DNA from: Ruditapes philippinarum
Taxonomy: Eukaryota
Length of the DNA: 64,000 bases
Assembly: GCF_026571515.1 (NCBI RefSeq)
Contig: NW_026864865.1
Span: 62,001 to 126,000 of the forward strand
Direction of reading: 5' to 3'
The notes under the pieces: generated by a model
What the model saw: only the letters and a program-made list of their open reading frames with translations
Database searches by the model: none
Told to the model about the DNA's origin: nothing
Shown here: positions 9,281 to 24,173 of the stretch, piece by piece
How the letters are laid out: each line of letters begins with the position of its first letter
Position numbering within the stretch: position 1 is the stretch's first letter
Program-made: the position numbers and the translations under genes

Positions 9281-9677
9281 CTAGAATATAAATATTATAC
9301 TACACGTTCTTTTTTATTTTGTTTAAGTAACGGAAGTAAACATTTCAATTTAGATTAAGAAGTGTTAATAAAAACTAATCTAACTTTTCATTTATGGTAA
9401 AAAAAATCTATTTAAAAAAGAAATAACCATGAACAATATTTGAATTAAAATGACAAAAAGTCTGGACATAACATTGGAAGGAAAAATAAGTTATGTAAAA
9501 TATAATGTTTTTAATGTATATACATAAAATGTAACAAGAGAATAATTGCCGTAGTAGCAAAGATCGTAATGACGTGATCGTTTGTTGATATGAGTCATTA
9601 GGAAATACATATTGAAAATGTACAAACTGACTTTACACGCCGGGTGAATATTTTAACAATAAGTATATTAATGTTAC

Positions 9678-9790
9678 CTAAAGACCCGCTTTTGTCCATG
9701 CTTAATATCTCAATTTCAAACTCTTCGCTAGTGTACACATTCGGCTTGAACACATACAATCCAATACCATTACTTTCGTATGTTGCATAG
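9678..9790 (-). CDS. Host gene SPRY exon (YATYESNGIGLYVFKPNVYTSEEFEIEILSMDKSGSL)
   Basis: ttttacAG acceptor, GTaaca donor; 113 bp, phase 2 to 1; contains the SPRY 'FE(V/I)EI' strand. Confidence 0.88.
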
Positions 9791-10280
9791 CTGTAAAAAT
9801 AAACGTGAAACCATATTATTGTAATGCGTACATTTGTTACAAGTCTAAAGAAAGAATGTAATAGTTAATTATTCTGATTGCATTTGAAATTATTGTATGG
9901 CAGGTGTTTTAAACCATGCATTTTCGCTGGTATATCAAGTATCGTTACTTTTTAGTATTTTCTTTTTTTAATATGATGAAAATGTTACGTTGGTTATTTT
10001 ACAAGTTAATATAAATTGATGATGATTATCTTGTCATAATAATTCTTCACGATGATTAATTAAATTTGTAATGTAAACCTGATAATAGTATTTGTATAGC
10101 AATACCTTATGTCTATATTATTCAATAAAAAAAGAAATAAATATATAACTATAAACTCGGTATTGCTATTTTCCTGTTTAGAGCTTATATAATTAGATAA
10201 CGTATATCATATACATTTTCATATCACTTTTAAACATAACTTTGTATAATCATGTGAAATTTCTAAATCGCAACATAAAT

Positions 10281-10503
10281 GAATTTTATGTGTCATAAAA
10301 TTATTTATATGCAAGACAACATAATTTCTTAATATCATTCACTTTTGTTTTCTGTAAATCCGCATACATCATATACACTGCAGATAGAGGTCCGCATACC
10401 GGAGTTTCGTTACCGACAAATAAACGGTGCATTTATCATGTTTATAATTAGCCTACGTCACTTCGCGTACCCCAGTGAACAAAGAAACTCGCATTTGCTT
10501 TTC
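10281..10503 (+). repeat. Ngaro terminal repeat A1
   Basis: Near-identical to 23960-24173 (few substitutions, one ~9-bp indel). Confidence 0.95.
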
Positions 10504-10718
10504 TCTCTATCAAATTTGTGTATAACTTTTGTTTTTCTACATTTTCAATTAAATAATCAGCGGAATATAATCATCGGCGTGTTTGTGTATTACATGTTAC
10601 CGTGTTTACGTGGATATAAACTTATTTAGACTGCTAGTGAAGGATTGTAATCATTGTTGTCGACCAAAATTTTCAAACAGAGGAAGTAGGTCAACGGAGA
10701 CGCTGAACAGCTACAATT

Positions 10719-10813
10719 ATGCCAACAACAAAGGTCTTGTTATATGGTCATTCATTTGTGTCTCATTTAAAACTTTTCATTCGGAATGAACATGATCTTT
10801 CGTATTCATTTAA
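10719..10813 (+). pseudogene. Ngaro SGNH hydrolase, N-terminal part (MPTTKVLLYGHSFVSHLKLFIRNEHDLSYSF)
   Basis: ATG at 10719; block-I nucleophile motif G-H-S; joins in frame (SYSF-N-LDPAHY) to 17447 when the Kolobok and one TTAA are removed. Confidence 0.88.
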
Positions 10814-12308
10814 GGTACATCAAACTTGTGAATGTGCTACTCCTCAACATTAAATGGCAGTTGCTGAATTGCAAAATAGAGAAGAGTATTGAGTAAAAAA
10901 AGTTTAATTTTAATAAATATATAGGGATATGTCATCATTGGAGTAACTTATTTATTCAAAAATTAAAATATGACAGTGTTGCAAAAGTTTGAAACTGAAA
11001 ATTACACACATACTGCTATGTCAAAATTTGGTTTAATTACTAAGTATTAGATACAAATTCTTTCATAAACATTAAGTCAATATATCAAATTAGTGCACCC
11101 AAATGTTAAATTTCGGTTAAATAACCTCCTTTACGTATTCCAAACTTTTCACGTGCTTCGGCATATATTTTTGACCCGCCATTTTATCAAATGTGTCTGT
11201 TTTTTCGTCGTTTTTTCCCAAAGGATATTCTTCTTATGCTTCGCTTTTTTAAATAAATTAAAACTGATTAATATTCCCATGAACAAAAATATTCATACAC
11301 CATACCTAAATACACAGAATTTCATTTCGATCGCTTTATACCTGACATAGTAATATCTTTCTTGTATTTATTTACATTTTTCGGCTTTCTGTTGACCGCA
11401 TAACGAAAGGAAGTAAAAAATATTCATACACTGAAGTAGACCTGACCTGAAAGATCGGGTAATTTTGGCGCATATTAAGGAAAATGACATTTCTTTTATT
11501 GTTTTGTTTTCGTCTTTGTTAAAAAATATCAATATAACAAACGTATTTCAAATACACGCATTATATCATGGAACTTTGAACAATCGCGTACGTTCTTTTA
11601 ATTCCGTACAATTGGGCGGATATGGATTTCGTATGGTTACCCCAATGTCGTGCGCGGTACGATAACTATAGTTTGTTAGAATGGGTACCAACTAATTAAA
11701 CATGGCGGAATTGTAGACACGTTGTGGCGGAAAATCTTGTTTTCAACTTGTATTGAGTTATTACCGGTAAGATCAGATGTATTAAGTATAATTTATACAC
11801 TGGTACTTTATTCACTTTCTTTATTCCATAAATTGTTATACCGATCGGCCAAGTTGTACGATGATTTAGCATTTACAAATAAGTAACTTTCGTTTTCATT
11901 CAACAAAATGTAAACAAAAACAACAGGTTCTCGAATGCCCTGTAAAAACAATTTTATGAATTGTATTTTATTTCTTCTGAATAATTATGCAAGTGTAATA
12001 TTATAATTAAGTTTTGAAGGTAAGTAAGCCCGAAATCTGTATTGTTTTACAAAAATATTTTTCAAACTAATGAAGCGTGAAATGACATGAATGAAAGTGG
12101 ATATACAAGTAACGCGCTATGGTGTACTGATGTGCTCCAAATTCCTGGAATTTAATTTTTAAATATATTTTATGGAATTTATTTCAATTGTTGTGTCTGT
12201 GTATTCTTTAATTTGGAAATATTTTATACTTGTATAACTTGTGGTGAACATATAGCTTGAAAATAAAGGAAATATTGTAGTGGCACAAGAAAGTTTTAAT
12301 CCACCAGG

Positions 12309-14877
12309 ATGGGTAATAAAAGAAATCAGAAAGGGAAAAGACAAGTTTTTAATAAGGCCACTGGAATTCATAGTTTGAAATATAGAAGGAAAATTGTCAT
12401 TAAAGATGAAAAATTGAGAAGAAAATTTAGGAATATTAAACATGTGGACCCATTCTATATTAGGCAGAAAAAACAAGGTTTGAAATTTACACTTAGTAAA
12501 ATTATTATTCAGAGAGCTAGAAAATTCAAATGTTTGCTCGATAAAGAAAAAGAAAGACTGTATATAACATCATTGAAAGATAATTTAGAAGGTAGTAGAA
12601 TCATTAACATGCATAAACTTAAAAATCACATTTTAGAAATAACTTCACATGCCGCTCTATGCACTGAAGCTCACATGAAAGCCCTTTCAAATGACAATGT
12701 TATTGTCCTGGAAAGTGAGAAAAGGAACGGTTTTTATACCATCATCACCTGTAAATGCCAAGGATGTGGTAAGACATTTGAACTGGAAAATAGTGATAAG
12801 TTTGGATATACAAATATGGTTGATATCAATGTTCGTTCAGTTTGGGGTAGCATGGTAACAGGAGGAGGTTGCTCTTCGCTCAATGAGTGTTTTGGAAGTA
12901 TAGGAATTCCAGGCATTACTGAAAAAAAGTACTCTTCAATTGAGAATGAGATTGGACATATGTGGAAGTCCCTTCTTGATGAAGAACTTGTGAAAGCAGG
13001 TCAGGAAGAGCGTGCATTGGCAGAGGAAAATGACGAATATTTTCAAGGTATTCCAGCAATAACTGTTATATGTGATGGAGGCTGGAGTAATCGAAGTCAC
13101 AAACATAGCTACAATGCCATGGCTGGAGTTGCTGTCGTTTTCGGGGCTAGAACAAAGAAACTTCTGCATGTAGGTATCAGAAATAAAATTTGTTACATAT
13201 GTAGCCGTGCTGAGACTGTAAATGAACCATGCCACTAAATGCCTTAGATCTAATTTAGAACGTTTAATATCTGAAAAGCCACATTATAAAGGAAAAGGTA
13301 AACTCATGAGAAATAACATTAGAAGAATTTGTTCTGGAGTAAGATGCGCTATTGTAATGCGAAGTTCTGAACCCAATAAAATGACAGCAATTAAAAAACT
13401 TAAACAGGATATACGGAATGCCGGGAGACATGTCCTTGGCTTACATGATTTATGTTCCACAGATTTTTGTAAAAATAAGGAGAAAGATACAGACATAACA
13501 AAATCAAATGATAATAAAATGGAAAATAGCAATAATGATGAAGAAGATATCATAATAAGCCAATGCGAGTACTGGACTGATTCTGTAAAAAAATATTCTG
13601 AAAGTGAAATTGAAATGTTAAGAAAGGGCGGTAAGACAATATCACCGAAAAATTTTAATATTGAAGAGTTGTTAAGAGACATTTTTCTATTTCTGAATCG
13701 TCTATCTGAAAAGGCAAACCGTTTGATTGGTAACTTTACAAGTAATTTAGCCGAGTCCTGGATGAGCATTAAATGTAAATTTGAAGGGGGTAAAATGTTC
13801 AATAAATGCTTCCGTGGTTCATTTTACGCAAGATGTTATGGTGGAGCGTTGAGGTCTTTGCTAGGTCCAGCATGGTCACCACAAGTTTACAATCAACTTA
13901 CAGGTAAACGCCCTGACAGAGTTTTTATTAACACTTATAGACAAAGGTTTGTACGCTACAGATGTACCAAACGTGCCAAAGGTAGTGAAATAAACAGGAA
14001 CAAAAGGAAATTGAAGAAAATGAAAGCATCTGTTGAAAGCAGCAGTAAGAAAGCAAGAAAAGAATATGGCGAAACTGTGCTGCAAGATACAGCTGATATC
14101 AGTCCATCACAATTAAAAAAGGAATGTGATACGTTTTATAAATCAACAATATCTACATGCAATAGTAAATTAATTGAACAGCATACACGTGGTCAGTCAA
14201 GTAATATTAACTGGTTTGCTGAAAGAAAGAAAAGACTCACAAGTTCTGTATTTGGAGAAGTGATGTCAAGATCACAAAATAATAACCGTCCCAATTTAGT
14301 GAAAAGGCTTTTGTATTCCAACTTTAAAGGAAACATGTATACTTTGAAAGGGTTAAGTGAAGAGGATAATGCAAGAATTGAATACATTAATTTGAAAGAA
14401 AAAGAAGAAAATCTTAAATACAAAATTGATATTCCGGGTCTAATTGTTGACAAACTGAATCCTTATTTAGCAGCCTCCAGCGATGGTGTCGTAGTTGGAT
14501 CCAAAGGTCCTGAAGGTCTCATTGAAATTAAAACTTTATTACAGAACAAAAAAGCAATGATCAAAGAATCAGCAGAAAATGATAAAGCCTTTTGTTTGTC
14601 AGTGCAGAATGGCATTATTCAACTGAAAAAAAATCATAAATATTTTTATCAAATACAAGGTCAGATGAATATTATGAATTTCAAATGGTGTGATCTAATA
14701 ATTCGAAGAGTAAATCCACATGATATGTTTATTCAGCGCATATACTGTGATACAGAATTATGGAGAAATGTTATGATTCCCAAATTAAAGGCTTTCTATT
14801 TCACCCACATGCTACCTGAATTAGCAGTTCCAAGACATGGTACTCTATCTGGAATAAGAAAACCTGAATTACCATGG
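12309..14877 (+). pseudogene. Kolobok DDE transposase fused to a YqaJ/lambda-exonuclease (PD-(D/E)XK) domain, main exon; internal deletion and frameshift at ~13225-13235
   Basis: CxxC motif (CKCQGC), first Asp in ITVICDGGWSNRSHKHSYNA, RNKICYIC, NHATKC, Glu in TSNLAES; exonuclease motifs TRGQS..W..ER..RLTSS, PYLAASSDG, LIEIK, YFYQIQGQM; donor TGG|GTatgt at 14878. Confidence 0.88.
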
Positions 14878-15058
14878 GTATGTTCCCCATAAATGTAATA
14901 CTCATTTTTTATAATAACAATGTTTTTGTTTTTTTCAGCATATTTACATGTGCTTACATATATATCATCATATATAATAAATTACCATGTATAATAATAA
15001 AAATATATTTATTGTAACTTGTATCTTTTGTGTAATCCTTCATTTTTATATTTTACAG

Positions 15059-15216
15059 TTTTGTGGTACATCCTGCAAGAGATCAGAGAAAAAGAACTGT
15101 AAGAGAATTGAAGGTGACAAATTGGACTAAAAAGACTCACATACTCAGATTAAGACAGACACAGATATTTACATTGCAACCCCATTAATACCAACACCAA
15201 CACAATCAAGTAAAAG
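15059..15216 (+). pseudogene. Kolobok ORF linker exon (one in-frame TAA at 15128)
   Basis: ttttacAG acceptor and AAAG|GTgatt donor; phase 0 to 2 exactly bridges the exonuclease exon and the Tudor exon. Confidence 0.65.
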
Positions 15217-15943
15217 GTGATTTATTTTAATGTATATATAACTATATATAATTAAGATCTTTAAAGAATTCTGTTAAATAGGAAATATTACCAATTTGCA
15301 CTCTTTTAACAGCTGTAAATTTGTTTAGGAAATACCAATATGCAGAAAACATGAAAGTGTTCTTTAAAGGCAGGTGGTCTTAAGTAACAGGTAATTTTGT
15401 TTCTTACATTATGGAAAGGGACAGTTGAAATGTACTTTTTAAGTACAGTTGGTATCTAGCAGTATTAATGTTTAGATTGCTCTGTATACATGTATAAAGA
15501 AGTATTTTTAAATTTTTAATGATGTTTAGAATTTTCAATATACCCTTATTTGAATTTTATAATTTTTGAATGAAGCTGTTATATTAATTTATGTTCATGT
15601 ACTTTTTCACTGTGTACTGTAACACAAATGTTGACAAAATATTGTGCATTACATGCAATCCTTTCCTATCATGATGGTTATAAACATATATTATTGCCTT
15701 TATACACTATAAGCAACTGTAAATTGTTCTCAAATTAACTTTTGTTTACTATTTTTAAACATTAATTTGGCATAACATCCAAATATAATTTGGCATAACA
15801 TCCAAATAAATGAGCAAATTTAACTTGCAACTTTATTTTAAGTTTAAAAATGGCTAAAAATTATAAATATTTATTTCAGATTTTAAGTGCCTTCAACATG
15901 TATTTGAAAAGGATAGTTGATATTTTTTTATACAAATTTGCAG

Positions 15944-16178
15944 ATCAACACGTTTGAGAAAATTAAAATTCCTTGGAAGGAGAATCAACCACCAGTGGAC
16001 AGAATCAGATGGCTCTCTGAATTGGTACAAAGGCACCGTGCTTTCTGTTTCTTCTGGAAAAGACGGAAATCCTGATGCAGTATATGAGGTGCTATATGAA
16101 GGCGAAGACGCGTCATATGAAGTAGATTCTTTGATCAAAGACTATAATGAAGGCACCTTAACTTTCATAGATTTGTAA
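15944..16178 (+). CDS. Kolobok terminal exon encoding a Spindlin/Ssty-like Tudor domain
   Basis: tttgcAG acceptor, phase 2; FLGRRINHQW.E.DG...WYKGTVL...YEVLYEGED..Y...LIKDYNEGTL resembles the Spin/Ssty repeat pattern (G.R(I/V).H.W....W.G.VL...Y.I.YDG....Y...L..DY..GDL). Confidence 0.75.
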
Positions 16179-16730
16179 TGGTATACTTTATTTCTCTTCC
16201 AATTTACATTATACCATGTACTGTATGTTTTTATATTTAAAAATTGATTTTAAAAAATATTTAAATAACATTATGCATAATATCTTTTTAATGTTAACAT
16301 CATATTACAACAGCTTTGAATGTAATTAATCCTATATAATAATTTACAGTTTCTGATTTTATGGTTTTTATGTTTAATTAATTTTGCAAGAAGGTCATGT
16401 TTCAATTCATTTTAATGAATTATTACAAGAAGGAATATTATCCTGCTTATCTTATGGATTATTGCAGTAAATTTTTTTATAAGTAAGCCATGTCCATAAT
16501 AGTACACCATACTTAACCTTGCACTACTTTTGTGTACATGCTATGTAAACATTGGACTTAGATAATGCTGTGTTTACTGGCCTTATTGGAATATAAATTT
16601 TCAATTGATAAATAATTTTTTCAGGTAATGGAGATTCAGTGTCACTAAAATAGATGTTACTTTAAAAGTTTTCATTCATCATATCACATATTTATCATTG
16701 GAAGGAACATTATTTTGACATACAAGTTAC

Positions 16731-17229
16731 TAAGGGTGTAACGGTTTACCGGTATACCGATATATTGCAATATGAAAAAATAAATTTCGAACCGCGGTAC
16801 GATTTTTGGAAAACCGGTATTTTATAAAAATCATCATTTTCAATTAATTGCCTTCTAATTTTGTACAAATTCACATAAAATCTTTAATTGGCAAATTTTG
16901 TTGGCACCAACGTAAGATAAAAGTATCCGACAACTAGTACACTTGAAAGTCAATAAGCGGCCACATAATTTACATAAGCCGCCCAGATGTGAAAGGTCAC
17001 ACGCGACTAGTTTTGTTGATCAAATTGTGTGACACTACTTTCTATTTATTCCTTACATTTTTATTAAGTTTCTACTAAAAATATATACATATAATAATAA
17101 TATATAAATGTTACTCCATCTTTACATCAAAACATATACACGACAATACGTATTGCAATATATTGCAATACGCTTCAGCAAAATGGCAATATATTGCAAT
17201 ACAGTTTTTGCTGTATTGTTACACCCCTA
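16731..17229. mobile_element. hAT-type MITE inserted in the Kolobok 3' region
   Basis: 8-bp TSD CAAGTTAC at 16723-16730 and 17230-17237; TIR TAAGGGTGTAAC / GTTACACCCCTA; subterminal TATTGCAATA repeats. Confidence 0.9.
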
Positions 17230-17446
17230 CAAGTTACATGTGCTGCAAACTGATTCAGGTAAGGCTTTTGCTTTTATTTTATTTTTTTTTTATTTTTAGG
17301 CAATGTAACAGCTTCTTTATAGGAAAAGGATTAATGCCTCAACATTTTCCTTTTGAAATGTACCTCACAATACTTCAGTTGAAAGTTTTAATTTTTGACC
17401 TAAAATTTTCAACAAAACAATATGGCTGCCATTTGATGCACCTTAA

Positions 17447-17956
17447 TTTGGACCCAGCTCATTACATGGTGCAGTTTTCTGCATTCCCAGGATCAACCGT
17501 GTCGAAATTGGATCGAAGCAGCTTGTTGGAAATTGTGAAGGATTTTGAACCTGACATTGTGTTTTTAATGATAGGAACGTGTGACCTTTATCAAACAGGC
17601 AGTTACCCAGAACGTATAGCACAGGACATCTGCACTCTAACGAACAACTGCACAACGTGTACAAAGTGAAATATGTGGTCGTTCTACAAACATTACACAG
17701 AATACCCCCACGTGTTTTTTTTAAATATCCGGTGGACTGCATATCGTTTAACAGTCATGTTGACATATTCAACCATCATTTACATTCCCATTTGCCAAAA
17801 GGGTACTCCAGATTGTTGCGATTAAAAGGCTTTTGGACAGAAACAAGTCAACAGAGGGTATTTGCTGCAGACGGCACACACTTATCTCCCCTAGGGAACA
17901 GAAAACTGTACAACAATGTTAGAGCAGCCATTATCAGTGTAACAAAGGATTTATAA
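17447..17956 (+). pseudogene. Ngaro SGNH hydrolase, C-terminal part (one frameshift at ~17645)
   Basis: PG block II (FPGSTV), PDIVFLMIGTCDL block III, DGTHL block V followed by the G..KLY helix. Confidence 0.88.
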
Positions 17957-18092
17957 ATCAAGATACGTATATATTCCATACACTGCTAGATTTTCACTTT
18001 AAATGTCTTATCTCTTAAGGCTTATATTGTCTTTATCAAATCATTAATCATTAGGATTTGAAACTGTATGGCAATAGCTACATGTACATAGA

Positions 18093-18230
18093 AAATGTTT
18101 ATATTTTCTAGAGGCTTGCATACATGTACTAGCTTAAAATTCCACAAGGAAAGTTTATCATGTAAATGTTTATATTTTCTAGAGGCTTACATACATGTAC
18201 TAGCTTAAAATTCCACAAGGAAATTTTATC
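18093..18230 (+). repeat. Two-copy ~71-bp tandem duplication
   Basis: aaatgtttatattttctagaggctt.catacatgtactagcttaaaattccacaaggaaa.tttatc occurs twice. Confidence 0.9.
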
Positions 18231-18983
18231 TCATGATCCGTATTTTTCAGTTTAAGTATATGCATATTTTATTTCATTTCAGTGCAGTCATACAGCATTT
18301 ATTTATTATATCTTCTGATGTTCTAGATTCCCTCAAGGATTTATTTTACCTTTGGAATCTAATGATCCAGAACTTTTTAGTTAAGCACTATAGTAGGAGT
18401 GTTTTAGACGGACAATATTTCAGTACAGTTTATAAATTTGATGAGCCAGATTTTGCCCTTGGGCTGGTCCGATGTTCCAATATAGTAACAGATTATGCCT
18501 GATGGCGATGATTACATTTACTCTATAGTAACGGAGTATGCCTTATGGCGATGATTAACACTATAATAACAGTGTTGTGGTGCAGTATTTATAACAAGTG
18601 TATATATTTTTTGATGATCCAAATCAATTGATAGGCAATTTTTTCCTAATTCGGTCTGATGTTCTAAAAATGTTCTACTTTCTATTACAGGGTATATGTA
18701 TAATGTACATAACTCAAGAAATATAAAATATAATTATCAAATTTCGGGAACGACAAACATATATTAAAGTTAATATAATAATTTACATTAATTGTCATTG
18801 TTTTTACACAAATATCATATGAATCAATTGATACATCTTTGTAGTGGTACTGCTTTTTACTACTTATCAAATATACTGTATTATACATGAATATTCATAT
18901 AGTATACCTAAAGAGGGTTTTCTTTAATAGTCTTATAAGATATAAATTTGTTCTTTGTTTTAATTTTTTATAAATTTTTGTAG

Positions 18984-20090
18984 GTAAAACGGACCCGGTC
19001 AGGCATGAAGGCTAGTACAGCAGCCTCTGATAGCCAAGCTCAGAAAAGAAAATCAACTAAAATACAGACAAAACTGGGACAGAGAAACTCTTTCTCTACC
19101 AATGTTAAATCGCATTTAAAAACTGGAACTAAAATCGGTACAATTAATAGAAACAGAAGACCACCCCTCCCAGAAAGAAGGCTCAGAGTAAGAACCAATC
19201 AATGCCGGAAGACCCCACGGAAAATGATATCTCAGATGAAGTTGACCAAGAATCCTCAACTTTCTGTGATGGTTCAGATTCAGACATGGATGATGTCACT
19301 TTTAGTCAAATAACGGCAAATCACACAAATAATTTTTTTCAAAATGGTGGGTATGATGGCACTCTTCTAAACACGCCCATTTCTACCCCAATTTCCCCAC
19401 AGATTAACAAAAAATTAAAGAAAAAAATTTGGTCTGACACATACATTGATATGGCAGACCTTCTACCAATGCAAACCTCATCCACCAATACCAATCAATT
19501 TACGCTTCAAATAACGTAAGCCTACCCCCTCTCACAAACCCAGAAAATTTTTCAAAATTGATGATTGGACAACTGCCTTTCTACGATTTGTAGCTGTTTA
19601 TTCGAAAAAATTTCCATATTTAACAGCTGCACTGATGAAATATGCCGAAATAGTCAGGAATATAGCAACCTGTCGACAAGGACTGGCGTGGCAAACTTAT
19701 GACACGCAGTTCCGATTACTGGAATCCCAGATGGGCATGCCTTGGGATACGATGCATTACGAACTTTGGTTAAAAGCATGCACCGATCCACCTCCTTACG
19801 TACATTCAAATCCCCGGCCCTTTCGTTCAGAATTCTCATTAAATAGACACTGGAAAAAACCTAAACCTTCCCAACCCTTGTCAAAGTTTTGGCCAAATAC
19901 ATGCTGGCCTTACAATAGACAAGACTGCAGATCAACTAACTGCACATTACCCCATGTCTGTGGTTTCTGTAAAGGTACCCGTCATGCAAGTCAGTCCCAA
20001 TATCGAAACAGATCGCATGCAGCTCAATCCCTCCTCGGCCAAAACCAAGGGAAACAATCCAATTCACCAAACCACAGTCTGTCAAATATG
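18984..20090 (+). pseudogene. Ngaro gag-like ORF (frameshifted)
   Basis: KKKIWSDTYIDMADLL, DWTTAFLRFVAVY, LMKYAEIVRNIA...W.TYD.QFR...W.....ELW, Cys/His finger CWPYNRQDC...C...HVCGFC...H. Confidence 0.85.
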
Positions 20091-21654
20091 TACAAAAACA
20101 AGCTTCCAACACCCATTAAAATTCGACCCCTCATTTCCTTACAACAGGGTAATAGTGACATGAACTAGATAAAAAATGGTTTCCAAAAGGGGGTTCATTT
20201 AGGTTATATAGGCGATAGGTCAGCATGCGATATTAGAAATTTGAAATCTTGCATGGAATATCCAGAAATTGTAGAAAGAAAACTGGAAGCCGAGAAAAAG
20301 CATCACATAATTGTTGGTCCATTTGAAGTATCTCCCTTCGATAATTTAAAAATTAGCCCAATAGGAGTTGTTGAAAAGAAAACACCAGGTCAATACCGTC
20401 TTATTCATCATTTAAGTTACCCAACAGGTTTCTCAGTAAACGATTTTATAGATCCTTCGTTATCAACAGTAAGTTACACATCATTTGATGATGCAGTCAA
20501 CCTCCTCATTAAGTTGGGCCCTGGTTCCCTGTTCAGTAAAACAGATATTGCAGATGCCTATAGATTAATACCCATTCATCCGGATGATTATAGCTTGTTA
20601 GGCTTCAAATTCAAAGACCAAATTTAATTTGGCAAATGTCTGCCTTTGGGAGCTTCCAGCAGTTGTGCCATTTTCGAACGGTTTAGCTCTAGCCTTGAGT
20701 GGATCGCAAAGAAGAAATTGCTAATTCCACATATAATACACATTTTGGATGACTTTCTCATTATGGGCCCTCAAAAGACAAATACATGTAAGCTCCATTT
20801 AGATAATTTTTTATCCATGTGTAAATCGATTCGGGTACCAATTTAATCTGAAAAGACCCAACAACCATGTAATGTCATTACATTTATGGGCTTAGAATTA
20901 GACTCTGTGCAAATGATGGCCAGACTACCACAAGATAAGCTTATGAAATTAAGACAGTTACTATCAGTTTATATCAATTGTAGGAAAATAACTCTTAAAG
21001 ACATGCAAAGCTTAATTGGTCTTCTAAACTTCTTTTGCTATGTAGTCACACCAGATGTTTTCTTAGAAGATTAATTGATCTCACTAAAAAGGTCATTAAA
21101 CCAAACCATCGCATTACACTTAATGCTGAAAGCCGAAAAGATATTAAAGCTTGGCAAATATTTGTGGAATAATTAATGGAAAAAAATTACTGCTAGATGG
21201 AAAATGGTTGACAGATGAACAATTAAGTTTGTTCACTGATGCATCCGGAAGTTTGGGGTTTGGAGCAATATTTGGCAACATTGGTTCTATAATTTTTGGC
21301 CTGAAAGTCTATCAAATATGGCCATTACCTATAAAGAAATGTTCCCTGTAGTAATAGCCATTGAAGTTTCGGGGGCAAATGTTATGCCATAAATGCCTTG
21401 TTCTTCATTTTGATAATGAAGCTGTTGTATATATTTTAAATAAACAAACTTCCAAAAACCCCTTAGTAATGCATTTAGTTAGACGCTTTGTATTACTTTG
21501 TATGAAATATTATATTCTCATTAAAGCTGTCCATATCAGTGGTAAATTGAATTATCTCTCTGGTCTTTTATCACGTTTACAGATAAACCAGTTCAAAACA
21601 GTGGCACAACAGCACATGGATCCGGATCCCACAGACGTGTCCGATCTCATTTAG
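20090..21654 (+). pseudogene. Ngaro reverse transcriptase / RNase H (stops and frameshifts)
   Basis: LPTPI, GPF..ISPIGVVEKK..YRLIHHLSYP, KTDIADAYR, CLPLGASSS, ILDDFL; RNase H LFTDASG, DNEAVV, HISG..N...LSR. Confidence 0.93.
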
Positions 21655-21669
21655 ACCAAACGGTTCTAG

Positions 21670-22569
21670 ACCTCTTGAATAATTCTTTGTCAATTTCAAC
21701 CAAGCACTCATATGAGCATTCATTAAAACATTTTTTTCACATTTATACAAAGTACCTACCCGGGAAAAGCACCTTTCCCTGTCTCTGAGTATAAAACTGC
21801 TCAATACATAACATACTGTTTCGAAGAAGGTTATCGCTAAATTACTATACGCACTAAAACATTAGCCATTGCTTACTTGCACAAAATCTATAAATATCAC
21901 AATCCTACAGACTCATTTGTCATTTCGAAAATGTTGTATTCAATAAGAACAACCTCTACCCCGTCTGACAGTAGGCTTCCAATAACTATCCCTATTTTGA
22001 AATCAATTATCCAAGCCCTCGACACAATAGTGCCCTCATCATATGACAAGCTCTTGTACAGGGCTATTTTCATAGTTTCTTTCTTTGGCCTCTTAAGGAT
22101 TGGTGAAATGACACTCACACCAACAGGTTCTACTAATGTCATACAAAGTAATAACCTCACTTTCCACAGATCAAAGTCCACCTATAAATACAATAAAGCA
22201 ACGATTTATATGTCAAAGTACAAACATTTTGATGGTAAAACCTCCACAATTCTACTGAAAAAGAATACCTATCTTACCATTTGTCCGGTTAACGCATTAA
22301 AAAGTTACCTAAAGAGAAGGTCAGCTCGGCCTGGTCAATTATTCATATGTAAAAATGGCCGTACATTATTCAGTTCTACTTTTCGCTCATTGTTAAGAAA
22401 CTGTGTTGAACATATAGGTTTGGATCCAATAAAATATACACCTCACTCATTCAGAATAGGTTACGCCACACACGCTTTCAACTGTCAATATACTCAATTA
22501 CAAATCCAGAAATTAGGCCGCTGGAAATCCAATGCTTTCAAAGGATATATTCGCCCTGTCAATTTATAA
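21670..22569 (+). pseudogene. Ngaro tyrosine recombinase (catalytic domain open from 21877; N-terminus disrupted)
   Basis: DSRLPIT, FFGLLRIGE (R), CPV, HSFRIG (HxxR), GRWKS...Y (W, Y). Confidence 0.93.
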
Positions 22570-22644
22570 TACGAAAAAGTTTATGCCATAAAAAAAGCTA
22601 GTGCCATCATACTACCTACAGTGATTGTTTTGTTGTTAGCAATA

Positions 22645-23310
22645 TCCTGACTGGCTAAGGCAGCAGGATATTTAATATTGAATGTTAAGTAATACTGACA
22701 TTGATTACTTGTGTTCACAGTTACCTGACTGGCTGAGGCAGCAGGAAATTTGTACATATGAACTTTTTTCAACATAAAACTTTTACTCTTATAAACTTGT
22801 TCCTGACTGGCTGAGGCAGCAGGAAATCTGTACATATGAACATTTTTCAACATACAACTTTTACTCTTATGAACTTGTTCCTGACTGGCTGAGGCAGCAG
22901 GAAATCTGTACATATGAACGTTTTTCAACTTGCAATTTTTATTCTTGTAAACATGTTCCTGACTGGCTGAGGCTGCAGGAAATCTGTACATATGAACGTT
23001 TTTTCAACTTGCAATTTTTACTCTTTTTAACATGTTCCTGACTGACTTAGGCAGCAGGATATTTGTACGTATGAACAATTTTCACAAATTATATCTATTA
23101 CTCTAATCATTTATATTTCCTGACTGGCTTAGGCAGCAGGATATCTGTACATATATGAAAAGTCTTCCAATGTATCATCCTTTTAACTCTAATTCATAAT
23201 TTTCTGACTGGTTAGGCAGCTATATATCTGTACATATTTATGACAGTTAATATTTTTACATTTAACTGCTTGTTATTCATATTTTCATGACTGGCTTAGG
23301 CAGCAGGATT
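22645..23310. repeat. Nine-copy array of a 24-bp imperfect palindrome (TCCTGACTGGCTNAGGCAGCAGGA) with 54-60-bp AT-rich spacers
   Basis: Core starts at ~22646, 22724, 22802, 22880, 22958, 23037, 23119, 23203, 23286; period 78-84 bp. Confidence 0.93.
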
Positions 23311-23796
23311 TTAGAACATCAAAGTGTTAATTGATACTTTTACATTTTGTTCCTCATACCTTTTAAAATCATTTTTCTAAATAATCTGATCTTAATTGTT
23401 ATACAGGACTAAGTTTGGCAGAAGGCATAATTGTTAAAATATAGTTTATAAACAACAAGCATTTTATACAAATTTTATGTAAGTAAGACTACAATTTTAC
23501 TAAGTGTATATCTAAGATCAGAACAAATTATGTTTGACTCCGACAGCTAAAGCTACAAGATTATATATATTTCATGTTACATTCACTGACTAGCCTAACT
23601 AACAGTTGGCTGTTAATATTTGAGTTATACAACATATTAAAGTTAATTTGTCTCATGTTTCTTAAATCTAATATGGCCAATTTATTTTTATTACTTTGTC
23701 AATTTTATTAACAATGTTTACATTATGTATATACTACTACCAAAAACACAATTTTGTCTGGCAGATATGGGTTAATTTATTAACAACCCATTTATG

Positions 23797-24173
23797 GCGG
23801 TTTTTACCTGCCAGATATGTCGAAAAATTAACACATTCTTATTCATATTATACTTATGGCTTAATAAAGCCCAAAAATCAATCTTATAACATGGTTGTTT
23901 CTTATTTCCCAATACAAGCTTCAATTGAGTTTTTGGTGGTTGTCGCAGTTAATATAAATGTATTTTATGTTTCATAAAATTATTTATATGCAAGACAACA
24001 TAATTTCTTAATATCATTCACTTTAGTTTTCTGTAAATCCGCATATATCTTATACACTGCAGATAGAGGTCCGCATACCGAAGTTTCGTTACCGACAAAT
24101 AAACGGTGCATTTATAATAAGCCTACGTCACTTCGCGTACCTCAGTGAACAAAGAAACTCGCATTTGCTTTTC
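23797..24173 (+). repeat. Ngaro internal B1-A2 junction repeat
   Basis: B1 23797-23959 abuts A2 23960-24173 (..tataAAT|Gtattttatg..), followed by ccagcctcccaccac. Confidence 0.93.

What the first reader, a model, noticed from the sequence alone, without database searches (positions are those of the whole stretch)
12309..16178. Transposase-exonuclease-Tudor fusion: a Kolobok transposon with a putative histone-mark reader
Seen: three exons inside the TIRs (to 14877 phase 0; 15059-15216 phase 0 to 2; 15944-16178 phase 2) join in one frame with a single internal TAA. This attaches a ~75-aa aromatic-rich domain (HQW, WYKG, YEVLY, YEV, DY) to the C-terminus of DDE plus YqaJ. Known: KolobokE elements pair DDE with a lambda-exonuclease; Spindlin Tudor repeats bind methyl-Lys/Arg through aromatic cages; chromodomains steer chromovirus integration. 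Inference: chromatin-guided targeting or anti-silencing by a cut-and-paste transposon that may also process its own ends or donor break. I do not know this three-domain architecture as described. Its landing inside another transposon fits heterochromatin targeting but is a single event.
Basis: partly seen in the sequence, partly recalled or inferred. Interest (0 to 1): 0.85.

Follow-up and report, generated by a model that had tools for sequence, protein, structure and literature searches.

The report
Kolobok transposon carrying a Spindlin-type Tudor
A cut-and-paste (KolobokE) transposon family in this mollusc genome encodes, on a small last exon after its transposase and nuclease, a Spindlin-like methyl-mark reader domain that is conserved in diverged copies and in other molluscs; I found no paper describing this for a DNA transposon, and the copy in this window is itself dead.

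Summary
A frameshifting deletion of about 210 bp at 13226 removes the region of the second catalytic Asp.

The element spans 10814-17442. It has GG...CC termini and a TTAA target duplication, proven by at least 8 paralogous empty sites, so it is a KolobokE transposon nested in an Ngaro-like retroelement.

The exon-3 peptide is a single Spin/Ssty Tudor repeat:
- Sequence search against solved structures gives Spindlin-1 at E=1e-7.
- All four aromatic-cage positions are kept.

- Nine other independent copies read CAA at the TAA position.
- One paralog (C10943) has all three exons open.
- Four diverged Kolobok lineages in this genome keep the domain as the C-terminal exon, with dN/dS about 0.3.
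- Gene models in Tegillarca, three Mytilus species and Lottia join the domain to the nuclease, and three of them also to the transposase domain.

I found no paper describing this. A 2025 paper claims the first Tudor-bearing TE, a Gypsy element. The scan noted the same architecture earlier on other DNA of this genome (s1-803738).

I rate it a new variant of a known kind.

The parts
10810..10813 (.). 5' copy of the TTAA target-site duplication
   Evidence: In at least 8 paralogous copies of the host repeat the two flanks are contiguous and share a single TTAA, e.g. G000:C3795:82420-82423.
10814..17442 (+). Whole KolobokE element: a dead copy, 6.6 kb including a nested MITE
   Evidence: Homology to at least 9 other copies starts and stops exactly here.
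10814..10824 (+). 5' terminal inverted repeat GGTACATCAAA (5'-RR terminus)
   Evidence: Conserved in all copies. Its partner is 17432-17442.
12309..13226 (+). Exon 1, first part: N-terminus and first half of the DDD/E transposase (PF20700 profile positions 2-208)
   Evidence: E=1.4e-40. It ends at the deletion point.
13226..13227 (+). Breakpoint of the ~210-bp frameshifting deletion, private to this copy among those examined
   Evidence: The other copies carry about 210 extra bp here, encoding residues 307-376 of the intact ORF (second catalytic Asp region and the Cys of CxxH).
13227..14877 (+). Exon 1, second part (shifted frame): end of the transposase, linker, and the PD-(D/E)xK YqaJ-like nuclease (about 14212-14673). 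It ends at the donor CCATGG|gt.
   Evidence: YqaJ 8e-08, Viral_alk_exo 2.6e-05. (SSDG...EIK motif). (donor).
14878..15058 (+). Intron 1 (gt...ag)
   Evidence: The sites are kept in the other copies.
15059..15216 (+). Exon 2: a basic, Ser/Thr/Pro-rich linker with a private nonsense codon TAA at 15128-15130
   Evidence: Nine independent copies read CAA (Gln). The exon is open in every copy that aligned to it without indels.
15217..15943 (+). Intron 2 (gt...ag), phase 2
   Evidence: The acceptor and phase are conserved in lineages A and C, and are compatible with my reading of the sequence in B and D.
15944..16178 (+). Exon 3: a single Spin/Ssty Tudor-like domain plus the stop codon. It contains no Met, so it cannot be a free-standing ORF.
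16731..17229 (.). Nested 499-bp MITE (TIR TARGGGTGTAAC, 8-bp duplication CAAGTTAC), absent from the other copies
17432..17442 (+). 3' terminal inverted repeat TTTGATGCACC (YY-3' terminus)
17443..17446 (.). 3' copy of the TTAA target-site duplication

Best explanation
This is a dead, nested copy of an autonomous KolobokE cut-and-paste transposon family of a mollusc genome.

The family's single gene has three exons:
- Exon 1 encodes a DDD/E transposase followed by a PD-(D/E)xK (YqaJ / lambda-exonuclease-like) nuclease.
- Exon 2 encodes a short basic linker.
- Exon 3 encodes one Spin/Ssty (Spindlin-type) Tudor repeat that ends the protein.

Shown:
- The element's ends, and TTAA-specific insertion into an Ngaro-like retroelement.
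- The domain identities.
- That the Tudor exon always travels with the transposase-nuclease, as the C-terminal exon in the same intron phase.
- That it has been kept under purifying selection across four diverged lineages in this genome, and is also present in other molluscs.

Inferred:
- The three exons are spliced into one polypeptide (about 0.8).
- The four-aromatic cage binds a methylated lysine or arginine, most simply on a histone tail as in Spindlin repeat 2. This would tether the transposase to marked chromatin and bias where, or whether, it excises and integrates (about 0.4-0.5).

The window copy cannot make this protein. It lacks the second catalytic Asp region, is frameshifted, and has a nonsense codon in exon 2.
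For: Ends, TSD and empty sites. The Kolobok and KolobokE definitions they match: PMC9587614.

Domains: PF20700 at 5e-74 over profile positions 1-357, and YqaJ at 1e-10, in the intact paralog L013:5139-7931.

Tudor identity:
- phmmer against solved structures gives Spindlin-1 at E=1.1e-7, aligning the query's W18, Y28, Y51 and Y58 with F141, W151, Y170 and Y177.
- AF2 model: pLDDT 90.9, pTM 0.77.
- About the top 45 Foldseek hits are all Spindlin1-4, with TM about 0.65 and rmsd from about 2 A.
- The language-model neighbours that carry a Pfam family are all Tudor families.

Linkage and selection:
- CAA replaces TAA in 9 independent copies.
- Paralog C10943 has all three exons open with gt/ag sites.
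- Lineages B, C and D carry the exon downstream of Kolobok transposase matches on the same strand.
- A stop codon follows the domain immediately in every lineage, and the phase-2 acceptor is shared.
- Between lineages dN is 0.25-0.5, with dS saturated or at least 1.3, giving dN/dS about 0.3.

Other species: gene models ending in this domain exist in Tegillarca granosa, Mytilus edulis, M. coruscus, M. californianus (RefSeq) and Lottia gigantea. In the models that reach the nuclease's end, the join comes right after the conserved nuclease end GIR(E/K)P..W.

Mobility: at least 4 internal-deletion derivatives share one breakpoint (12222 joined to 15537) at different TTAA sites.
Against:
- Pfam's own Spin-Ssty model scores exon 3 below its curated cut-off (19.5 vs 25 bits).
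- The low divergence of exon 3 among family copies is not evidence of selection. Intron 2 and the 3' UTR are equally similar, so this copy is a 5'/3' mosaic.
- Arthropod KolobokE gene models lack the domain, so it is not needed for Kolobok transposition in general.
- Heterochromatin targeting rests on a single nested insertion.
Confidence: 0.75

Rival explanations
1. The Tudor exon makes a separate small product. An alternative transcript would splice a short 5' exon to exons 2-3 and skip the transposase. The result would be a Tudor-only regulator, for instance a competitor for the chromatin site or a repressor, rather than a fusion with the enzyme.
For: No RNA data. Internal-deletion derivatives keep the 5' 1.4 kb and exon 3. 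Several database gene models are truncated and carry only the nuclease plus Tudor (P0158, P0160).
Against: - Exon 3 has no Met and starts in phase 2. That phase fits the end of exon 2, which in turn fits the phase-0 end of the nuclease ORF.
- Models in four species run from the nuclease into the Tudor, and the Lottia model joins a truncated transposase to it.
- In the derivatives the Tudor exons are decaying: W18C, and Y28 changed to a stop.
Confidence: 0.12
2. The domain is a real fused Tudor barrel but not a histone reader. It would bind a methylated non-histone protein (for example piRNA-pathway or Sm-type proteins), bind nucleic acid, or mediate transposase multimerisation.
For: The Tudor fold is shared with RNA-polymerase-binding UvrD/PcrA Tudors and others. 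A single repeat lacks the Spindlin three-repeat context. Only the cage residues, not the peptide-groove residues, are clearly conserved.
Against: The best sequence and structure matches are specifically to Spindlins, well above other Tudors. The structural match is to Spindlin1 residues 125-195, which is repeat 2. The four cage aromatics are invariant or nearly so from bivalves to a limpet.
Confidence: 0.3
3. The exon is a passively captured fragment of a host Spindlin-like gene (transduplication) with no role in the transposon.
For: The genome holds many other Spin/Ssty-coding sequences, so donors exist.
Against: - The exon is kept open, C-terminal and in phase in four lineages whose silent sites are saturated, with dN/dS about 0.3.
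- It is present in Kolobok gene models of two mollusc classes.
- The cage residues are invariant.
Confidence: 0.03

Closest known systems
KolobokE lineage of the Kolobok superfamily (Kojima & Bao 2022, PMC9587614)
   Same: TTAA-specific 4-bp duplication, 5'-RR...YY-3' termini, and a DDD/E transposase with the C/DxxH signature followed in the same protein by a PD-(D/E)xK lambda-exonuclease-like nuclease.
   Different: That description has no reader domain (the paper's text has 0 occurrences of 'Tudor' or 'chromodomain'). Here a third module, a Spin/Ssty Tudor repeat on its own 3' exon, ends the protein. It is seen in mollusc members but not in the arthropod gene models sampled.
Spindlin1-4 (Spin/Ssty family), methyl-lysine/arginine readers of H3K4me3, H3R8me2a, H3K9me3 and H4K20me3
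   Different: One repeat instead of three packed repeats, attached to a transposase-nuclease rather than free-standing. Binding specificity is untested. Pfam's model scores it below its cut-off.
Chromoviruses (Ty3/Gypsy integrases with a C-terminal chromodomain) and the Tudor-bearing Gypsy-10_Ec32 of Ectocarpus (PMC12477816)
   Same: A royal-family histone-reader domain at the C-terminal end of the enzyme that inserts the element. This is the presumed logic of chromatin-guided integration.
   Different: Those are LTR retrotransposon integrases. The Ectocarpus paper states its Gypsy is, to its authors' knowledge, the first TE reported with a Tudor domain.
piggyBac
   Same: TTAA target duplication.
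   Different: From my own knowledge, piggyBac termini are CCC...GGG and its transposase is a different family. Here the termini are GG...CC and the transposase matches PF20700. PMC9587614 makes the same contrast in the termini.

Membership tests
Kolobok superfamily | [quoted passage not shown] | tested here: met
   TTAA flanks both ends here and in most of the other copies examined. At least 8 empty paralogous sites carry a single TTAA. Definition in PMC9587614.
Kolobok superfamily | Termini 5'-RR and YY-3' | tested here: met
   GGTACATCAAA...TTTGATGCACC.
Kolobok superfamily | DDD/E transposase with the C/DxxH signature between the second D and E | tested here: met
   The intact paralog L013 ORF matches PF20700 over positions 1-357 (5e-74). 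It has ...ICDGGW......IADGDSS... and ...CANH.... In the window copy the second Asp region and the Cys are deleted. Catalytic roles are assigned by motif only.
KolobokE lineage | [quoted passage not shown] | tested here: met
   PF09588 YqaJ and PF01771 Viral_alk_exo above their cut-offs. SSDG...EIK motif.
KolobokE lineage | Placement inside the KolobokE clade of the transposase tree | not tested
   No Repbase or KolobokE reference sequences were available in the tools.
Spin/Ssty (Spindlin) family | Match to the family's curated profile | tested here: inconclusive
   PF02513 gives E=8e-4 and 19.5 bits, below the 25-bit cut-off. Direct phmmer to Spindlin-1 chains gives E=1.1e-7 and 34.8 bits.
Spin/Ssty (Spindlin) family | Tudor-like beta-barrel fold of a Spindlin repeat | tested here: met
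Spin/Ssty (Spindlin) family | Four-residue aromatic cage | tested here: met
   W18, Y28, Y51 and Y58 align with F141, W151, Y170 and Y177. They are invariant or nearly so in 15 sequences from this genome, Tegillarca, Mytilus and Lottia. The cage residue numbers of Spindlin1 are from my own knowledge of the 4H75/4MZG structures.
Spin/Ssty (Spindlin) family | Three tandem repeats | tested here: not met
   There is a single repeat, and the protein ends right after it in all lineages. It works like one Spindlin repeat and is not a Spindlin orthologue.
Spin/Ssty (Spindlin) family | Binding of methylated histone peptides | not testable with these tools
   Needs peptide arrays or ITC.

The most novel reading that the evidence does not exclude
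A clade of KolobokE cut-and-paste transposases, seen here in two bivalve orders, this genome and a patellogastropod limpet, carries its own histone methyl-mark reader in cis. That would be the first DNA transposase known to read a histone mark directly, and a natural template for chromatin-state-directed transposases. The same genome also has a second, unrelated multi-copy ORF family ending in a Spin/Ssty repeat.
Probability: 0.35. Interest if true: 0.8.

Novelty: new variant of a known kind. Interest (0 to 1): 0.62.

Why it matters
Reader domains that steer integration are a classic feature of LTR retrotransposons (chromoviruses). Lentiviruses achieve the same in trans through LEDGF. For cut-and-paste DNA transposons, target choice is usually ascribed to DNA sequence or accessibility.

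A transposase that carries a Spindlin-type methyl-mark reader, conserved under selection across molluscs, would make the question "do DNA transposases read chromatin marks?" directly testable. The material exists: a small, well-folded domain, and a family with one copy whose three exons are all open. It also adds a third accessory module to the known KolobokE design, and broadens the known contexts of the Spin/Ssty fold beyond free-standing three-repeat proteins.

Tried and rejected
Linkage of the lineage B-D Tudor exons to their transposases therefore rests on the coordinates, not on full element reconstructions.
- The search for homologous proteins found few hits because of its word index and length window: the Tegillarca Tudor region found only itself, and exon 3 alone found three short fragments.
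Every search was done exon by exon, by reference.
- I first read the 97-99% identity of exon 3 among copies as purifying selection, then rejected that. Intron 2 and the 3' UTR are just as similar, so this copy is a 5'/3' mosaic.
- piggyBac was rejected (termini and transposase family).
- A MULE reading was rejected despite the Pfam name 'Mutator-like', because of the TTAA duplication and RR/YY termini.
- The exon-2 peptides have no significant relatives among the homologues, so I treat exon 2 as a variable linker.
- Complex prediction was not used. Binding would depend on methylation, which it cannot model.
- Insertion-site preference was not tested, because a dozen sites cannot be told from the repeat background.
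Full report
**1. What is in the window**

The window is AT-rich eukaryotic DNA (27-39% G+C in 2-kb windows), from a 1.4-Gb assembly of 15,874 contigs. Its closest named protein relatives are all from molluscs.

On the plus strand there are two long ORFs in different frames, 12309-13238 and 13222-14892:
- The first matches Pfam PF20700, 'Mutator-like transposase', over profile positions 2-208 of 357 (E=1.4e-40).
- The second matches PF09588 (YqaJ) and PF01771 (viral alkaline exonuclease).

- Donor CCATGG|gtatgt after 14877.
- Acceptor ttttacag| before 15059.
- A 158-nt exon ending AAAAG|gtgatt at 15216.
- Acceptor tttgcag| before 15944.
- An open frame running to the TAA at 16176-16178.

The phases fit (0, 0 to 2, 2). 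The only stop in exon 2 is TAA at 15128-15130.

**2. The real element**

A DNA search of the whole genome found many copies. I aligned the window against copies fetched with long flanks. Homology begins at 10810-10814 and ends at 17442-17446.

The termini are TTAA|GGTACATCAAA...TTTGATGCACC|TTAA, here and in most of the other copies examined, and each copy lies in different flanking DNA.

Searching the two flanks separately gave at least 8 paralogous loci in which the left and right flanks are contiguous and overlap by exactly four bases, a single TTAA. One example is C3795, where one match ends at 82423 and the other starts at 82420. These loci are empty sites. They prove three things:
- This is an insertion.
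- The ends are exact.
- The duplication is TTAA.

The host repeat carries a tyrosine recombinase (PF00589, 7.8e-07) and a weak GDSL/SGNH-like hydrolase match. That fits an Ngaro-like retroelement, as another note of this scan also reads it (s1-811344).

**3. State of the window copy**

Compared with the other copies it has three private changes.

- **A deletion of about 210 bp at 13226 that shifts the frame**. In protein terms it removes residues 307-376 of the intact ORF. These include the ...IADGDSS... motif, which I take by position to be the second catalytic Asp, and the Cys of the C/DxxH signature.
- **A nonsense codon, TAA, at 15128.** Nine independent copies (C12145, C949, C1438, C10003, C10943, C2215, C14444, C32, C12648) all read CAA there.
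- **A nested 499-bp MITE at 16731-17229**, with TARGGGTGTAAC inverted repeats and an 8-bp duplication CAAGTTAC.

This copy is dead.

It is also a mosaic. Against the main subfamily its 5' part differs by 9-15%, but everything from intron 2 onwards differs by only 1-4%, non-coding DNA included. The high similarity of exon 3 among copies therefore says nothing about selection.

**4. The family is or was recently mobile and has an open copy**

- Four full-length copies differ pairwise by 2.7-4.7%.
- In paralog G000:C10943 (L013/L014), exon 1 is one open frame of 931 codons from its ATG. It contains the full PF20700 domain (positions 1-357, E=5e-74) and YqaJ (1.3e-10). Exons 2 and 3 are open with gt/ag sites.
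- At least four internal-deletion derivatives (C9517, C5536, C9211, C11987) share one breakpoint, 12222 joined to 15537, and sit at different sites, three of them with TTAA at both ends. C892 shares the breakpoint, but its ends were not examined. The deleted form was therefore mobilised in trans.

**5. What family the element belongs to**

Kojima & Bao 2022 (PMC9587614) define Kolobok by TTAA-specific duplications and 5'-RR...YY-3' termini. [quoted passage not shown] All of these features are met here.

The nuclease shows an SSDG...EIK motif. I could not place the transposase on their tree, because no reference sequences were available.

**6. What exon 3 encodes**

The 77-residue peptide (15945-16175) was tested in several ways.

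- **Pfam.** It hits Spin-Ssty weakly (E=8e-4, 19.5 bits, below the 25-bit cut-off).
- **Direct sequence search.** Against all solved-structure sequences it gives Spindlin-1 at E=1.1e-7, then Spindlin-2B, Spindlin-3 and Spindlin-4, with nothing else below E=0.1.
- **Cage residues.** In that alignment W18, Y28, Y51 and Y58 fall on F141, W151, Y170 and Y177 of repeat 2, and on the corresponding Trp/Tyr residues of repeat 1. The numbering of the H3K4me3 cage is from my own knowledge of the Spindlin1 structures. The tail D-Y-N-E-G-T-L matches D-Y-K-E-G-D-L.
- **Predicted structure.** An AlphaFold2 model built from a 15-row alignment has mean pLDDT 90.9 and pTM 0.77. It shows a strand-rich barrel, a short helix and a final strand.
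- **Foldseek.** Roughly the top 45 ranks are all Spindlin chains, with TM about 0.65 and rmsd from about 2 A over about 70 columns.
- **Language-model neighbours.** Those that carry a Pfam family are all Tudor families; the nearest clusters carry none.

The domain is a single Spindlin-type Tudor repeat with an intact aromatic cage.

**7. Whether it belongs to the transposase gene**

Several independent lines say yes.

- **It cannot stand alone.** The exon has no Met and begins in phase 2.
- **It recurs in diverged lineages.** A protein search of the genome finds four lineages of this exon: A (this family), B (61-65% identical), C (46-52%), and D (split by an extra phase-1 intron).
- **It keeps the same position.** In B, C and D it lies downstream of Kolobok transposase/nuclease matches, on the same strand. 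Examples:
  - C3025: matches at 9653-11985, exon at 14327.
  - C13510: 117950-115627, then 113495.
  - C4298: 214012-215069, then 216847.
  - C6995 and C13586: 5.6-7.3 kb downstream.
  - C7910.

- **It always ends the protein.** In every lineage a stop codon follows the domain at once. The acceptor/phase-2 arrangement is shared by A and C, and is compatible with the sequence in B and D.
- **It is under purifying selection.** Between lineages, silent sites are saturated (dS at least 1.3 or not computable) while dN is 0.25-0.5, giving dN/dS about 0.3. Within lineages the ratio ranges from 0.07 to 1.0 on very few substitutions, so it is uninformative.
- **Other species' gene models show the same join.** A full HMMER scan of 1.84 billion representatives with the intact ORF, plus a further word search, found models that end in this domain in:
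  - Tegillarca granosa (P0016; transposase, YqaJ, Tudor at 770-847)
  - Mytilus edulis (P0035)
  - M. coruscus (P0112, P0159-P0161)
  - M. californianus (RefSeq, P0158)
  - Lottia gigantea (P0024)

  Where a model reaches the nuclease's end, the join follows the conserved motif GIR(E/K)P..W, after a 45-160-residue Ser/Thr/Lys/Arg-rich linker.
- **The key residues are conserved.** Across all these sequences H16, W18, W27, Y28, G30, Y47, Y58 and L63 are invariant, and Y51 nearly so.

More distant KolobokE gene models from a spider, a scale insect and a bee lack the domain. Most other hits are single-ORF calls from metagenome-style assemblies, which cannot show a spliced exon.

**8. How it most likely works**

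The architecture is shown: transposase, nuclease, linker, then a Spindlin-type Tudor repeat. Fusion by splicing is inferred at about 0.8.

The most economical mechanism is that the cage binds a methylated lysine or arginine on a histone tail and tethers the transposase-nuclease to chromatin carrying that mark. This would bias integration, or help the enzyme reach silenced donor copies. I put this at about 0.4-0.5.

Which mark is bound cannot be told from sequence. Spindlin repeats read H3K4me3, H3R8me2a, H3K9me3 and H4K20me3. The single nested insertion seen here is no evidence for heterochromatin targeting.

Rival readings are a non-histone ligand (0.3), a separate Tudor-only isoform (0.12) and a passive captured fragment (0.03, disfavoured by the selection data).

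**9. Novelty**

- Full-text searches for Kolobok with YqaJ, with exonuclease or with Tudor, for Spindlin with transposase, and for KolobokE found no description of this architecture.
- The KolobokE-defining paper does not mention a reader domain.
- A 2025 paper on Ectocarpus states that its Gypsy element is, to the authors' knowledge, the first TE reported with a Tudor domain (PMC12477816).
- The scan itself noted the same architecture earlier on another piece of this genome, where a follow-up agent reached the same reading (s1-803738). My tests on this locus are independent of that note and agree with it.

I class it as a new variant of a known kind: KolobokE plus a cis reader domain, analogous to chromoviral integrases.

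**10. Limits**

- The species is not identified.

Noticed in passing
L057:475-1791 (G000:C2566), L059:1480-3084 minus strand (G000:C5185), L060:793-1698 (G000:C9786): A second, unrelated multi-copy family has long intronless ORFs (open frames up to about 1,000-1,150 aa) that, in the three ORFs examined, end in a Spin/Ssty repeat above Pfam's cut-off (35, 29 and 27 bits). The genome holds at least 77 matches, many of them decayed. The N-terminal part has no Pfam family. Its language-model neighbours are a 678-member uncharacterised mollusc cluster and Basidiomycota hypothetical proteins. It may be another mobile element with the same reader module.
   Followed up: partly
window 16731-17229: A 499-bp MITE is nested in the 3' subterminal region of this Kolobok copy only. 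It has inverted repeats TARGGGTGTAAC and an 8-bp duplication CAAGTTAC, which looks hAT-like.
   Followed up: partly
window about 10270-10809 and 17447-24170: The host of the insertion is a repeated element of about 7-8 kb. It has a ~230-bp direct repeat (about 10272-10503, and again at 23951-24173), a GDSL/SGNH-like ORF interrupted by the Kolobok insertion, and a tyrosine recombinase at 21877-22566. It looks Ngaro-like, agreeing with note s1-811344.
   Followed up: partly
window 10814-17442 compared with L013-L022: This copy and C12145 form a subfamily. Its 5' half differs by 9-15% from the main subfamily, while its 3' part (from intron 2 on) differs by only 1-4%. That suggests recombination or template switching between Kolobok subfamilies.
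   Followed up: no
L052-L055 (G000:C7910, C6584, C15648, C14872): In lineage D the Tudor domain is split by an extra phase-1 intron of about 550-780 bp at the ...SG|KDG... position. This is an intron gain inside a transposon's reader domain.
   Followed up: no
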